Assembly (NCBI RefSeq): GCF_031769215.1
Contig: NW_026782001.1
Coordinates: 62,001-126,000 of the forward strand
Source: Ylistrum balloti
Lineage: Eukaryota
Reading direction: 5' to 3'
DNA: 64,000 nucleotides
Numbering within the stretch: position 1 is the stretch's first letter; every line of letters starts with the position of its first letter. Shown here piece by piece: positions 23,804 through 40,006 of this stretch. Under the pieces are notes generated by a model. It worked only from the letters and a program-made list of their open reading frames with translations. It ran no database searches and had not been told where the DNA came from. The position numbers were made by a program, and so were the translations under genes.

Positions 23804-26800
23804 TCATCGTTGGCTTTGGACCGTAAGGTTTGCGTAAATAGGTCGTGTCGTTGGAGTATCATAATCTGATTGTCCTATATTGGAGTTGCTGTACATGTGT
23901 AAAGACTCATACGAGACCTTATCTCGTTTTTCAGGTACTTGTTCATAGGCATGTTGGGGTTCCATAGTATTTCCGTAGAGATGAAGACTGTCATATGCTT
24001 CAGGAGGAGAGGTGGAGACGTTCTGTTCAAAATCCTGATACGATTCTGAAAATAAATCAAACGACAAACAGAATTATTTCGTTGTTTTTCTCTAAAAAGG
24101 AACTTGGCAACCTCCATCTTTTGATCTTTACTTGATGTTTTTATCTTTCCATTACTGTCCACTTTTTTCAGCTCTTTCCGTGTTATTATATCGACTAGTG
24201 AATGAATATTGCAGTGACATTGTAATACATTATTTTTGAATGACCCGTCCAGTACTTTCTACAAACAGTGATGACCATATACAGAATGAAATCCATGACG
24301 GACCCTCCTTGTCAATATTTTCCATCAGTTGCCATTTTGTTTTTTCTTAATCTGTCCCATCTAGTTCTCTAGAAATAACGACAACAATCTTTAGGTGTCA
24401 ATCCAATATGACAGATTTTTAGGGAAATGTACACATCAACCTCTCAGGATATAACGTTATCAAACATTAACGAAGTCCAAGCTACGCCCCGTTTTTAAAT
24501 TAACATATAGGTATTAAGGAAAAGGGAACACGCAAATGAAGTTTCAGAATGAACCATACGTGCTTATAGCGAAACAACAAACGTGAGAACCGTTTAAGGA
24601 CGGACGGATGGACGGACGAACAGCCACCATCATCAGAGGATGAAGAGACATATACATGTTCTAAAGCTTTGCCACATTTACAGCGTATACATAGTGAATG
24701 TCCCCTTTTTTCAAGGCGCTGCATTTTTTTTGGTACTGTGCATGTACATACTTTTCTATATCATATCTTTTATATTTTCGTGATGATTCTGTACTAATTA
24801 ATTTGAACAGATAGGCACACAACAGTTTTTTGCGAATTTTGTGTCGTTTTTTGACACCTAGCAATTAAGAATGGACTGTTGCTTGTCAGACATATCATCG
24901 TTGCTGGTAATGTGTACAACCACCCCCTACCCCTCCACTTCCTTGAATGAAGTGTTTTCCCAATGTCGCATAATTTGGGATGTGAAAAAAAACGCTATCT
25001 ACAAAAACCTAAACAAACATGATAAAAGTATTTTAATAAAGCGGTTTTCTCGGTTTAGTTTGTTTGAATTAATTGAAAAAACGAACCTCTATAATAATAC
25101 TCTGTAGGTTAAAATGTGAAATTAATAAATATTCACCATTATCCTGTGAAGTTGCACCTTCTGCTGCGGGTTTGACATATACACGGCCATTACTTGTCAA
25201 GTTCTTTGTATCACTGAAAATTAAATGCATCTATAACTTAAAATCAAAGTTTATTATTATTTTTTACTAAAATCACTTCATAACGTAATCTTTTTTTCTG
25301 CAAACAGTCAAAAAGGCGAGTTATGTCCAAATTTGATATTCGAATATGCTTGAATGCTGATTCGTCTTCATTCATCACAGAATTCTTCGTGCTATACAAG
25401 ACTTCACAAACGATGTACAATGACAAATCAGCTGTATGTCTTTTTTATTGGTCTGGCGACATGTCAATAATTTGGTTTTTATTATTTTTGATTAGAGTTA
25501 TGTTGCAATCATTGTTACCTCAAAAAATTGTTTCAACAGTTCTATCTTATATACAAACTTTATAGAGATACGATCAAACTATTTTTAAAATTCATATACA
25601 ATAAAGACAAACATGATAACTAGTGGTTTTCACAGTAATTAATAAGTAGAAGGTTTTGTCCATCGATTTTGTTGTCAGGGTACCTGTGTTATCGATCTTT
25701 ATTCCATCTTCGAAAGTGATATCCATTACAGTACTTATCTAATGGAATTATGTTACCATGGTTATATACTCACTCTAAGGGATTCTTCTTTCGTTTGTAT
25801 CTGACCCTGAGTAGCAATACCGCCATGACAACAGCAGCCAGCACCACCAGAGGTATCCCTATAGACAGTCCGGTGGAGGCAGGGTTGTCTTGCTCGTCTC
25901 CCTCTTCTGCGTTCCCGACGTTTGTCTCTTCTCCGGATCCCTCGGTGACGTCCTCTGCTTGTGTAGTGGTTGGTGCAACAGTGGTGGTAGTGGGCGTGGT
26001 TGTTACAAGTGGCTCGGTTGTAGTGATGGTGTTAGTGGTTATTTCAGTTCGTACGACTGTTGTAATCTGTCTTTTAGTAGTGGTGACTGTAATTGGGGCA
26101 TCTGTAACGTAGACATTGTCTGAAATAAACGTTTTAGATTTAAATCGTTTGTATTGAGAAAAAATCTCGTCGATTGTAAACGTTAGAAATGCACACGAGA
26201 TGAGTCAAATCCGCTTGACAGGAATTCCTAACTACATTTTCATCTTCATTTTTTATGTAAGCACTAATTCCTAAGTGCAGTTCATATATATATACTCTCA
26301 ACAGGTCGTCCCTAGTGTATGTGAGGCGTGTGCATGTTTTGTGTGACTTTCCGAAAGACTGTTGTATCTTCGTGTAAACTTTAAATGTTATGAGTGTGGT
26401 GTCTTGCTGGACATCACATCTGGTCACAATATACTGACAGATGATAAACCAGTTGCCATACTCTTATAATGCTGATTGTTAAACAGAGAGTTGTTACCAG
26501 CATTTTGTAGACTCTGGTGTGTCTCGGCCAGGGGACAGAACCCAAAACCTTCCTCGCAGGGGGAAACGCCCAAATAAAGGTAAAAAGTGAGGCGGTGTCA
26601 TGGGAAACAGTAGGAAGAACAAGCGTAATTTAGAAAGAAAAGATCCCAAATGTAGTCGCCTCTTAGGAATCATGCAATTGGAGAGAGCAGGTACAATTAT
26701 TAAGACCTGTCTCCAGGACAATTATACTGAACATGTCAAGATGATGATACATTTATTTATCACACGACGTCCTTAATATTATGTAGAAAGTTTGCATATT

Positions 26801-37058: not shown

Positions 37059-40006
37059 ATGATACTACCAGTAATTGTAGTAACCATGGCAGCGACAGTT
37101 GCATCCCAGACTCACATCAAAACATCGGCAAACGTGAGTTCGTTAGCAGCTTCGACGCTTCTGGAAGATTACGACGTAGATGATGACGATAACAGAATCT
37201 CGGTCTCCGATATTGACGAGGAACATTTGTGTACTAGAGAAATCGTGTAAGTTTATCTGTATCACAAATAGTCCCTTGTACAGATTGTAAGACGTGTAAG
37301 AACCTATATTTCATTAAGCATTCATAAAAGTCGCATATCAATCTAATTACGAGGAAACGTATTATGAATTTTCAAAGATGACAAGAAAATGAAATATACA
37401 TACTATAAAGACAAATGAAAAAATACTGTTTTGGAAATACGTGCAGCTGTTAAGGTCCTTTAGCTAATGTCATTTGCAGAATACAAAATATGCCTGGTGG
37501 GCCTGCTGTATACCTTGTCCTCATTTCGGATTGTGACATTACTCGCTTGTCCAAGTTTACATGGCAGGTTTCGTCGTTGAAGACGCTTACCCTCCTGGAA
37601 CAATTGGTCTTAGAATCCTTGTACTTTACCATAGTCTTATCGAATTTGAGTTTGAATTGAGATTCTGTTGACTTTTTGGTATATTCTTCGTTTTTTTTTA
37701 CACTACCGATATACGGTTCATTTTAGGGTGACCATTCATCCATATAACATTCAATATGATTCAAAGCAAAAAGGTATCAAGTAGGCACTTAGTATCGCTG
37801 ATGAGTCTTAGAAGGACGAATGGCTCTACCTTATTATTAACATGATTTTTTTTCGTTACTGTATTCTCGTATGGTTCTGTGGTTCAATTTCGACATTTTA
37901 TCAAAAGGGCCTGAAAACCTGATTATGTCTCTTTCTTTTCAGATTCAATTTCACACAGTTAATATCATATAGGGCTTATACGAGAAAGAAGTGTCAGAAT
38001 TCAACTAAGAACTGTAACAAAGACGGACACGAGTAAGTGAACTTAGATATAGAGATCTAGGGATACGGTGCATCAGGTATTTTAAATAGTTGTACAAAAG
38101 TTTGTACAAAAAGAAACATTAAGATTGCAACTTCTAACTATCAATCACGTCAAAAATGTTGATTACAAAATAATAATAATAATAATTTAGAAAATATTTG
38201 CACTTATTATATTGACTCTCACATATCCAATAACAACACATAAAACTTAATGAAAAAATCAATTAAGTGAAGTGACAATGTAATTATTCTGTTATGGTTT
38301 GAAGGTGGGTGACTTCCGTTCGCTACAGAAACCTGACTAAGACGAGGTTGGAACTCATTTGTTGTGAGGGATACATGAACGACAGTGGAAAATGTGTCAA
38401 AGGTGAGAGCTTGATGTGATAAATATATGAAGCCTATGCTGAAGGTCACGATAAACCTTCATTATCTTTTCTTTGCTCAGTTCCAACTTTCCAGCCTCAC
38501 AGGGTTTACCAAAACCCACTAGGTATTGTGTCAACAGCAAGGAAAGAGGACTAAAAACCAATGTTTTTCAACGTTCTTTCAAGCTTGTAACGAGAATAAA
38601 ACAAACTATTTACATGCATTGCAGAGCTTCTATGATTTTCATGATGTTTTGTGTCTGTTATTTTCCAGATCTTTCCGATTCAACAGTGAACAAAACGTCC
38701 GATCTTACACAAAGTGAAATGATGGAGAACACGTCTCTGTTGCTGATCGCGATTCCTGTGGCGGGCGCTGTTTTTCTCGTCGTCTTCATCGCTGTCATCT
38801 GCAAAATAAAAAGAGGAAAGAAAAGGTATGTCTACAAAATATGTTTAAACAATTTCTTTTGTAATGCACCATACGAAAGACACGCGAACTGCTACTTATA
38901 AGATTAAAGACACAAAAATAGATATTGTTATATCTCCTGGTGCATATCTTTCAATAGTAATTCAATATTAGATCAGTTTTTACGGCGATTATTTTCAAAC
39001 AAAATACCTTATACATATACTTTGTAGTAATTTTGCTCCTACAAATTTAGCTGCTTTGATGTTTACTCACATGAGTTTGAACAACTTAACCTAAATTTGA
39101 AGTAGGCAATATTGTTAGGAGCCAATAAAATATAGGCACATCTGTAATTTTCTTTTTATGCTCATTTCGCTTTGGTGTCAATTTTAATATCTAGTACGAA
39201 AATGATTAGAAATTGAAATACTTTGCCGAAGAAGATTTTAATGCCGCTGAAAGATGTTTATTAGGTCAAAAAGATCCATATAAATCATTTAAAATCGTGA
39301 TTTTATATATACAATTCATAATCTAACGAAGCTGTCATTATTGCTTTAATTTGATCAGTTTGATATACTCCAATTACAAGGTTGAACCGAGCATCACAAA
39401 TACATTAACAATTTCCTAGAAAAAAAATATGCATTGAGTTCATGACATCGTATGTTTTACCATTTTAGACCAAGAGAAAGGTCGTCCTTTGCACATGGTA
39501 AGTGTCTTAGTTTCAATTCATTGTATATCACTAATTCTTCAATAAAAATGGATGAATGTGGAGTCCGTACAGTACAGTACAGATATTTACATTTCGTTAG
39601 TAATATTTCAATATTTTATGATATGTTTGTGTTCTTAACGATAACATCAATATGTAGTGAGAAACTGCCGTACACCTTCTATCATTTCACACTCTCAATG
39701 TTAACTATTTTATTGTTGTGTTTTGTTTGTGATGAAAAAATTGATCGTCTACAGCGACAGAAAACATGTAAATTGTGACTTTAGTATACTGATATACATA
39801 TACTTACTTTCTACTACAAAACATCTTTTTAATTACGTTTGATACAAATGAAAATGCCGGTCAAATATACTTATATTTGACTTTATATTTCAGAAAACCC
39901 GATATATGACAGCAATCTTGGTCAATCCGTTGTTATCGTGGATAATACGTGTAGCAATGATGTGCAGTCCAACCATAATGAAATAACAGATACAAACACC
40001 AAATAA
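37059..40006 (+). CDS. Gene B: small type-I membrane receptor with a CCxGY (EMI/Nimrod-Draper type) domain and an NPxY tail, 194 aa. Exons 37059-37246, 38305-38402, 38669-38825, 39469-39497, 39894-40006.
   Basis: Signal peptide MILPVIVVTMAATVAS, acidic segment, HLCTREIV/WVTSVRYRNLTKTRLELICCEGYMNDSGKCVK/D..., TM LLLIAIPVAGAVFLVVFIAVIC, KIKRGKKR/PRERSSFAH/ENPIYDSN...TK*. GT-AG introns with phases 2,1,2,1; 585 nt in frame. Confidence 0.78.

What the first reader, a model, noticed from the sequence alone, without database searches (positions are those of the whole stretch)
23804..40006. Head-to-head pair of paralogous mini Nimrod/Draper-like receptors with different signalling tails
Seen in sequence: genes A (-) and B (+) diverge from a repeat-rich interval of about 7 kb. 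Both have five coding exons with identical phases (2,1,2,1), the same Cys layout (C-T at the end of exon 1; CC...CVK at the end of exon 2) and the identical junction TGTGTCAAAG|GT. Established knowledge: CCxGY marks the Nimrod/Draper/CED-1/MEGF10 family, whose full-length members carry EGF or NIM repeats and, in Draper/CED-1, both NPxY and YxxL motifs. Here neither gene has EGF repeats, B carries NPxY only, and A carries the YxxL/V cluster. Inference: a stripped-down receptor pair that may have partitioned Draper-like adaptor and kinase signalling.
Basis: partly seen in the sequence, partly recalled or inferred. Interest (0 to 1): 0.7.

Follow-up and report, generated by a model that had tools for sequence, protein, structure and literature searches.

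The report
Scallop EMI mini-receptor beside ITAM-tailed neighbour
Two small single-pass membrane protein genes sit head to head in a scallop genome and stay neighbours in a second scallop; one is a stripped-down relative of the Draper/MEGF10 engulfment receptors, the other carries a tyrosine-rich signalling tail, but nothing shows that the two are copies of each other.

Summary
The window is from the scallop Ylistrum balloti. Both genes are real.

Gene B (+, 37059-40006) is NCBI's uncharacterized LOC132545400 (224 aa). It has six coding exons, not five. B's EMI call rests on:
- a sub-threshold Pfam match;
- structural neighbours that are all Draper/MEGF10/PEAR1/EMID1;
- BLASTP matches to canonical EMI exons of the same genome.

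B has no EGF repeats, one membrane span and an NPIY tail.

Orthologues from Mizuhopecten yessoensis and from a transcript contig confirm them. A has a 4-Cys cap (CC[IV]P, not CCxGY), a Thr-rich stalk and eight invariant tail tyrosines, including an ITAM-like YEQ[VL]-x7-8-YE[SQ]L.

The head-to-head pair, with a tetraspanin neighbour, is conserved in M. yessoensis.

Paralogy is not supported. BLASTP, profile comparison, Pfam and structure neighbours find no A-B or A-EMI similarity. The 12-nt junction identity is at chance level and is absent in M. yessoensis. Only architecture and intron positions are shared.

No RNA data were available. The scan's other notes on this window cover the minisatellites, not the pair.

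The parts
29613..29713 (-). Gene A coding exon 1: start codon, signal peptide, first Cys (INCTEGTT); ends in phase 2, donor GTAAGC
   Evidence: Sequence; frame and splice check; tblastn to P0002 residues 1-23
29096..29175 (-). Gene A coding exon 2: CCIPD...RCVK; ends in phase 1. Its last 26 nt plus the donor form the first unit of the 33-bp minisatellite
   Evidence: tblastn to P0002 and P0004; alignment A3
28233..29120 (-). 33-bp minisatellite (27 copies) in A's intron 2. Each unit repeats the exon-2 end plus the splice donor. Absent from the M. yessoensis orthologous intron
   Evidence: TRF; pattern hits; no tandem repeat reported in L007 11046-12220
25774..26119 (-). Gene A coding exon 3: Thr-rich stalk, acidic stretch, membrane span (GLSIGIPLVVLAAVVMAVLLL), RVRYKRKK anchor; ends in phase 2
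   Evidence: tblastn 74% identity to P0002 135-187; only compositional Pfam hits
25137..25213 (-). Gene A coding exon 4 (77 nt, phase 2 to 1): DTKNLTSNGRVYVKPAAEGATSQDN
   Evidence: Candidate scan. It matches P0002 'DTNKLTANGRVFVKHPKGDNSAAND'. Frame check
23804..24045 (-). Gene A coding exon 5 with stop: tail with YQDF, YDSL, LYGN, AYEQV, YESL, MYSN, DYDT, IYANL
   Evidence: HMMER hit to P0002 at 1.3e-29; eight invariant Tyr in alignment A2
37059..37246 (+). Gene B coding exon 1: signal peptide, acidic stretch, first EMI Cys (HLCTREI); phase 2
   Evidence: The M. yessoensis exon has the same 188-nt length
37943..38032 (+).
   Evidence: P0001; sequence; conserved at 78% nt over 113 nt and the same 90-nt length in M. 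yessoensis
38305..38402 (+). Gene B coding exon 2: WVTSVRYRNLTKTRLELICCEGYMNDSGKCVK, the C-terminal half of the EMI domain; ends in phase 1 two codons plus 1 nt after the last Cys
   Evidence: The M. yessoensis exon alone hits Pfam EMI. BLASTP E 5e-5 to the EMI exon of a multi-EGF gene
38669..38825 (+). Gene B coding exon 3: glycosylated stalk, membrane span (SLLLIAIPVAGAVFLVVFIAVIC), KIKRGKK anchor; phase 2
39469..39497 (+). Gene B coding exon 4 (29 nt): RPRERSSFAH
39894..40006 (+). Gene B coding exon 5 with stop: ENPIYDSNL... (NPxY)
30392..30515 (.). Non-coding block 0.7 kb upstream of A's ATG, 79.5% identical over 127 nt to M. yessoensis. Candidate A promoter or 5' UTR exon
   Evidence: blastn
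33226..33277 (.). Mid-intergenic block, 90% identical over 52 nt to M. yessoensis, more conserved than the coding exons. Function unknown
   Evidence: blastn; no credible Rfam match

Best explanation
These are two lineage-restricted, uncharacterized type I membrane protein genes, kept as divergent neighbours in scallops.

Gene B is a minimal EMI-domain receptor. It has a signal peptide, an acidic N-terminus, one reduced (6-Cys) EMI domain of the Draper/MEGF10/PEAR1 type, a short N-glycosylated stalk, one membrane span, and a 54-residue tail. The tail's only tyrosine sits in NPIY. By analogy with CED-1/Draper/MEGF10, the EMI domain would bind a ligand or bridging protein. The NPxY would dock a PTB adaptor of the CED-6/GULP kind for internalisation. 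This function is inferred.

Gene A is a mucin-like stalked protein. It has a small 4-Cys cap and a 114-residue tail with eight invariant tyrosines. These form an ITAM-like YDSL-x12-YEQ[VL]-x7-8-YE[SQ]L string and three YxN sites. The most likely role is a tyrosine-phosphorylated docking platform for tandem-SH2 (Syk/Shark-like) and Grb2-like proteins. This is also inferred.

Shown here: the gene models, the conservation, the synteny and the motifs. Not shown: that A derives from B, that the two are co-expressed, or that they act together.
For: GENE MODELS
- B equals NCBI XP_060065073.1.
- A's exons match M. yessoensis XP_021350331 (P0002; tail E 1.3e-29, 76% identity) and P0004. P0004 sits uninterrupted on a 1,227-nt Logan contig, so that contig is a spliced transcript.

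SYNTENY
- In M. yessoensis a 234-aa gene lies head to head with the A orthologue, with the ATGs 7,363 bp apart.
- Its first three exons match B exons 1, 1b and 2 (E 1e-7 to 1e-9).
- A tetraspanin lies downstream of A in both species.

B IS AN EMI PROTEIN
- Pfam EMI is the best ectodomain hit: E 6e-4, 20.9 bits, covering profile positions 4-68 of 69.
- The M. yessoensis exon 2 alone scores 16.8 bits against EMI.
- All ten structure-neighbour rows are EMI-family clusters (Draper, MEGF10/11, PEAR1, EMID1), with TM by query 0.49-0.72 over residues about 51-130.
- BLASTP gives E 0.005 to a canonical single-exon EMI, and E 5e-5 to the EMI exon of a multi-EGF gene of the same genome.

NO EGF EXONS
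-.

A's TAIL
- Eight invariant Tyr in three species. P0004 has the classical YEQL-x7-YEQL.
- ITAM-Syk signalling has been shown in oyster haemocytes (PMC6994640).
- NPxY and ITAM roles in Draper/MEGF10/CED-1 are reviewed in PMC8092387.
Against: - B's EMI score is below Pfam's gathering cut-off (25 bits).
- The structural neighbours rest on a low-confidence Atlas model (mean pLDDT 0.51). My own AlphaFold models were poor (pLDDT 46 and 40).
- Conservation of B's NPIY could not be checked, because the M. yessoensis locus is cut before those exons.
- In Y. balloti and M. yessoensis the first ITAM half has V, not L/I, at position +3.
- No RNA run exists for this species. The one run that holds the DNA is low-depth genomic contigs. 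Expression and tissue are therefore unknown.
- B had no word-sharing relative in the 5.8-billion-protein search, so its range beyond Pectinidae is unknown.
Confidence: 0.62

Rival explanations
1. A and B are true paralogues from an inverted tandem duplication of a small EMI receptor. A lost the symmetric middle EMI exon and the CCxGY motif and diverged beyond recognition. The two then split Draper's NPxY and ITAM signalling arms between them.
For: - Same architecture and the same order of intron phases, apart from B's extra phase 2-2 exon. Removing that exon keeps the frame and leaves C-x23-CC-x9-C, close to A's C-x17-CC-x10-C.
- Both modules end exactly two codons plus 1 nt after the last Cys, in phase 1. 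All four canonical EMI exons found in this genome do the same.
- Both membrane spans begin I-[GA]-I-P-[LV], the only hhalign match.
- Adjacency and orientation are conserved in a second genus.
Against: - BLASTP E 1.8 on irrelevant segments.
- hhalign probability 2.3% for the whole proteins, and 0.6% for the A module against an EMI C-half profile.
- No Pfam EMI hit for A in either full-length orthologue or in the Y. balloti exons scanned singly.
- A's structure neighbours are unrelated families with TM about 0.5 or less.
- No BLASTP alignment to a canonical EMI.
- No tblastx exon-to-exon hit between the two genes.
- Phase-1 boundaries after Cys modules are common in extracellular proteins generally (established knowledge).
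Confidence: 0.28
2. One of the two is a pseudogene or an annotation artefact. Gene A is the likelier candidate, because its exon-2 donor is buried in a minisatellite.
For: - A's exon 2 ends inside a 27-copy array of its own donor.
- No RNA evidence in this species.
- No Y. balloti protein for A was retrieved. The query's length filter would have excluded a 281-aa protein in any case.
Against: - All five A exons are open, have AG/GT sites and keep frame.
- They match orthologues at 46-76% identity with every tail tyrosine kept.
- One orthologue comes from a spliced transcript contig.
- B equals an NCBI model and is conserved exon by exon.
Confidence: 0.07

Closest known systems
Draper / CED-1 / MEGF10 / PEAR1 engulfment receptors
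   Same: B has an N-terminal EMI domain whose nearest structural and in-genome sequence relatives are the EMI domains of this group. B is type I single-pass and has NPxY in its tail. A has an ITAM-like motif, as in the Draper and MEGF10 tails (PMC8092387).
   Different: Neither gene has any EGF or NIM repeat. The two tail motifs sit on two different proteins. B's EMI has 6 Cys and scores below Pfam's cut-off. A has no recognisable EMI. A canonical multi-EGF, EMI-bearing gene exists elsewhere in the genome (contig C995).
Stand-alone or short EMI proteins (EMID1; stand-alone EMI proteins noted elsewhere in this genome by the scan, s1-240764)
   Same: An EMI domain that is not followed by an EGF array. 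EMID1 clusters are among B's structural neighbours.
   Different: Those proteins are secreted, and EMID1 carries collagen repeats. B is membrane-anchored with an NPxY tail. I did not check the scan's note.
ITAM-bearing receptors and transmembrane adaptors (oyster CgIgR; vertebrate Ig-alpha/beta and LAT-type adaptors)
   Same: A's tail has YxxL/V-x7-12-YxxL units and three YxN sites. In oyster, CgIgR's ITAM recruits CgSyk (PMC6994640).
   Different: A has no Ig domains and no sequence similarity to these proteins. Its ectodomain is a 4-Cys cap on a mucin-like stalk. The resemblance to LAT-type adaptors comes from my own knowledge and was not tested.

Membership tests
EMI domain (Pfam PF07546): gene B | Match to the family HMM at or above the gathering score (25 bits) | tested here: not met
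   20.9 bits, E 6e-4, profile positions 4-68 of 69 for P0001:50-130; 17.3 bits for the whole protein. It is the best ectodomain hit but is sub-threshold.
EMI domain (Pfam PF07546): gene B | Cysteine skeleton ending in CCxG[YWF]...C | tested here: met
   C58, C80, C87, C112-C113 (CCEGY) and C123. CCDGF in M. yessoensis.
EMI domain (Pfam PF07546): gene B | EMI fold | tested here: inconclusive
   All 10 Atlas structure-neighbour rows are EMI-family clusters, TM by query 0.49-0.72. The underlying model has low confidence, and my AF2 model had pLDDT 46.
EMI domain (Pfam PF07546): gene A | HMM match, CCxG[YWF] motif, EMI fold | tested here: not met
   No EMI hit at E <= 10 for P0002, P0004 or the Y. 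balloti exons scanned singly. The motif is CC[IV]P. Structure neighbours are unrelated. hhalign probability 0.6% against an EMI C-half profile. The only shared feature is the phase-1 intron two codons after the last Cys.
Nimrod / Draper / CED-1 / MEGF10 receptors | EGF or NIM repeats following the EMI/CCxGY region | tested here: not met
   None in P0001, P0002 or P0004. No EGF-like open frames in the window.
Nimrod / Draper / CED-1 / MEGF10 receptors | Cytoplasmic NPxY together with YxxL/ITAM on the same chain | tested here: not met
   B has NPIY and no YxxL. A has YxxL/ITAM-like motifs and no NPxY.
ITAM-bearing signalling chains (functional class): gene A | YxxL/I-x(6-12)-YxxL/I in the cytoplasmic tail, conserved | tested here: met
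   P0004 has YEQL-x7-YEQL. Y. balloti and M. yessoensis have YEQV-x8-YESL, with V at +3 of the first half, preceded by YDSL-x12. All the tyrosines are invariant. The consensus is as quoted in PMC6994640.
A-B paralogy | Statistically supported sequence or profile similarity | tested here: not met
A-B paralogy | Shared intron positions and phases | tested here: inconclusive
   Four of B's five intron phases match A's four, in order and at comparable positions. B has an extra exon, and the phase-1 module boundary is generic to EMI exons.

The most novel reading that the evidence does not exclude
A and B descend from one small EMI receptor and now work as a two-chain engulfment receptor. B would bind the target through its EMI domain and recruit a CED-6/GULP-type adaptor through NPxY. 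A, after losing the middle EMI exon, would supply the ITAM for a Syk/Shark-type kinase. This would be a natural split of Draper's two signalling arms across a conserved divergent gene pair.
Probability: 0.1. Interest if true: 0.75.

Novelty: new variant of a known kind. Interest (0 to 1): 0.42.

Why it matters
If B works as proposed, it is the smallest natural receptor built on the Draper/MEGF10 plan: an EMI domain and an NPxY tail with no EGF array. That would make it a clean system for asking what the EMI domain does on its own.

A adds an unstudied, strongly conserved ITAM-like chain to the short list of candidate Syk-coupled receptors in bivalves.

The conserved divergent linkage gives a concrete hypothesis of cooperation that can be tested.

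The families were seen here only in scallops and are unstudied. No hit for their accessions was found in the paper library.

Tried and rejected
- **Own-genome six-frame searches** with B exons 2 and 3 and A exons 3 and 5 found only themselves. No close paralogues exist at that sensitivity.
- **Word-based protein searches.** B found only itself. A exon 3 found nothing, but its length window of 79-252 aa excluded the 281-297-aa proteins, so that blank means little.
- **RNA evidence.** No RNA run holds the locus. The single holder, X1, is low-depth genomic contigs, with no intron-skipping joints at exon borders. Expression is therefore untested.
- **AlphaFold2** of P0001 (single sequence) and of P0002 plus P0004 gave pLDDT 46 and 40. 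That is too poor for fold searches, so none were run.
- **PDB sequence search** of B's ectodomain gave only chance hits.
- **A candidate 'exon 1b' in A's intron 1** (29510-29430, open, donor GTAAGT) was rejected. It has no cysteines, is absent from P0002 and P0004, and is not conserved in M. yessoensis.
- **Rfam** on the intergenic interval found nothing credible.
- The spliced Y. balloti A protein has no single reference. It was therefore not sent to any search, fold or look-up tool. Its exons were searched singly, and the orthologues P0002 and P0004 served as full-length proxies. The exons were joined only inside a local script, to check frame and list motifs. As a result I could not look up whether NCBI annotates A in this species.

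
Full report
**Organism and locus**

A protein search with B's membrane-span exon returned an identical segment in NCBI's 'uncharacterized protein LOC132545400 [Ylistrum balloti]' (P0001, 224 aa). The window is contig C144:62001-126000 of a 648.5-Mb scallop assembly.

**Gene B**

Joining six exons in a local script reproduces P0001 exactly. The exons are:
- 37059-37246
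- 37943-38032
- 38305-38402
- 38669-38825
- 39469-39497
- 39894-40006

The phases are 2,2,1,2,1 and every splice site is AG/GT.

This exon encodes ...RKKCQNSTKNC... and raises the ectodomain cysteines to six: C58, C80, C87, C112, C113 and C123. In Mizuhopecten yessoensis the same exon exists with the same length, and so does the 188-nt first exon.

**Is B an EMI protein?**

- Pfam EMI is the top hit for residues 50-130: E 6e-4, 20.9 bits, covering profile positions 4-68 of 69. This is below the 25-bit gathering score.
- The M. yessoensis exon 2 alone also hits EMI (16.8 bits).
- The structure-neighbour search on the Atlas model of P0001, residues about 51-130, returned ten rows. All are EMI-family clusters: Draper, MEGF10/11, PEAR1, EMID1. 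TM by query is 0.49-0.72. The model itself has low confidence.
- A six-frame scan of this genome with the EMI HMM found canonical EMI exons. B's region aligns over the whole domain with the single-exon EMI on C355 (E 0.005).
- B aligns at 40% identity (E 5e-5) with the EMI exon CCEGF...CIK| on C995. That exon is followed by laminin-type EGF exons, so it belongs to an ordinary MEGF10/Draper-like gene.

I conclude that B carries a divergent, reduced EMI domain of the Draper/MEGF10 kind. It has no EGF repeats in the protein, and the window holds no EGF-like open frame.

B also has seven N-glycosylation sequons in the ectodomain, one membrane span, and a tail whose single tyrosine sits in NPIY.

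**Gene A**

An exhaustive HMMER search with the 80-residue last exon found two relatives:
- P0002: M. yessoensis XP_021350331, 297 aa, E 1.3e-29.
- P0004: 296 aa, E 4.7e-6.

P0004 is encoded without interruption on a 1,227-nt Logan contig, so that contig is a spliced transcript.

Aligning these proteins back to the window fixes five exons: 29713-29613, 29175-29096, 26119-25774, 25213-25137 and 24045-23804. The phases are 2,1,2,1 and the protein is 281 aa.

The protein has:
- a signal peptide;
- a 4-Cys cap, C-x16/17-CC-x10-C, with a conserved CC[IV]P...ARC rather than CCxGY;
- a Thr-rich stalk;
- an acidic patch;
- one membrane span;
- a 114-residue tail.

Eight tail tyrosines are invariant in all three species. 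They form YDSL-x12-YEQ[VL]-x7-8-YE[SQ]L, which is the classical ITAM in P0004, plus three YxN sites (LYGN, MYSN, YANL/V).

Pfam finds only compositional matches: TMEM154, Glycophorin A and mucin models, all below cut-off.

**Linkage**

In the M. yessoensis locus L007 a 234-aa gene lies head to head with the A orthologue. tblastn with P0001 matches its exons 1, 1b and 2. The two ATGs are 7,363 bp apart there and 7,345 bp apart here. A tetraspanin gene follows A in both species. The pair is therefore a conserved micro-syntenic unit, at least within Pectinidae.

Two non-coding blocks in the interval are also conserved: 30392-30515 (79.5% over 127 nt) and 33226-33277 (90% over 52 nt).

**Are A and B paralogues?**

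Every direct test was negative:
- BLASTP of P0001 against P0002 and P0004 gave E 1.8 on unrelated segments.
- hhalign of the A alignment against P0001 gave probability 2.3%, and matched only the first 11 residues of the membrane span.
- The A cap profile against an EMI C-half profile, built from B and four canonical EMI exons, gave probability 0.6%.
- BLASTP of A's cap against a canonical EMI gave nothing.
- A's structure neighbours are unrelated families.
- tblastx between the two gene regions gave no exon-to-exon hit.

The 12-nt junction identity is not significant. At least six other exact 12-13-mers link the two regions at E 0.25-1. The M. yessoensis junctions differ at 4 of 12 positions. 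'C-T' and 'CVK' are likewise not conserved in the orthologues.

What remains in favour of paralogy:
- The same architecture.
- Four intron phases in the same order at comparable positions.
- A phase-1 intron exactly two codons plus 1 nt after the module's last Cys. All four canonical EMI exons inspected share this feature, so it argues weakly that A's cap exon is EMI-derived.
- A shared I-[GA]-I-P-[LV] start of the membrane span.
- Conserved adjacency.

I put common descent at roughly 0.3.

**Function (inferred)**

In CED-1, Draper and MEGF10 the NPxY motif recruits the PTB adaptor CED-6/GULP, and the ITAM recruits Shark/Syk after Src-family phosphorylation (PMC8092387). An ITAM-Syk axis operates in oyster haemocytes (PMC6994640).

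On that basis B is most likely a ligand-binding, internalising mini-receptor, and A a phosphotyrosine docking chain. Whether the two cooperate is untested.

**Limits**

- No RNA run was available. The one run that holds the DNA is genomic.
- The structure models were poor.
- B's tail could not be compared across species.
- The spliced Y. balloti A protein was not sent to any search or fold tool, because it has no single reference. Its exons were searched singly and orthologues were used instead.

Noticed in passing
window 28233-29120 (and 32412-32870): A 33-bp minisatellite whose unit is the last 26 nt of A's exon 2 plus the splice donor. There are 27 copies in intron 2, open in frame with exon 2 for about 13 units, so downstream donors would add 11-residue GKNRGIARCVK units in phase. 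A second array of 13.8 copies lies in the intergenic interval. The M. yessoensis orthologous intron has no such array. The scan holds separate notes on both arrays.
   Followed up: partly
window 33226-33277: A 52-nt intergenic block is 90% identical to M. yessoensis, more conserved than the coding exons (75-78%). It has no Rfam match above threshold.
   Followed up: partly
window 34112-36362: A non-LTR-type reverse transcriptase fragment (Pfam RVT_1, 102 bits) sits in the A-B interval. A further RT fragment lies at 44439-44882.
   Followed up: no
window 2317-2841 (-): A single open frame encodes a small type I membrane protein with a TNFR cysteine-rich repeat (PF00020, 29.0 bits, just under the 29.4 cut-off) and a membrane span.
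   Followed up: no
window about 20590-21930: Tetraspanin gene exons, 76-87% identical at DNA level to the tetraspanin downstream of the A orthologue in M. yessoensis.
   Followed up: partly
L017 (G000:C995:201400-211378), 1554-9161: A canonical MEGF10/Draper-like gene. Its EMI C-half exon (CCEGF...CIK|) is followed by at least seven laminin-type EGF exons and runs off the contig end. It is the closest in-genome relative found for B's EMI exon.
   Followed up: partly
L007 14008-15822: The M. yessoensis A orthologue carries a different minisatellite (46 bp, 39.5 copies) in its intron 4.
   Followed up: no
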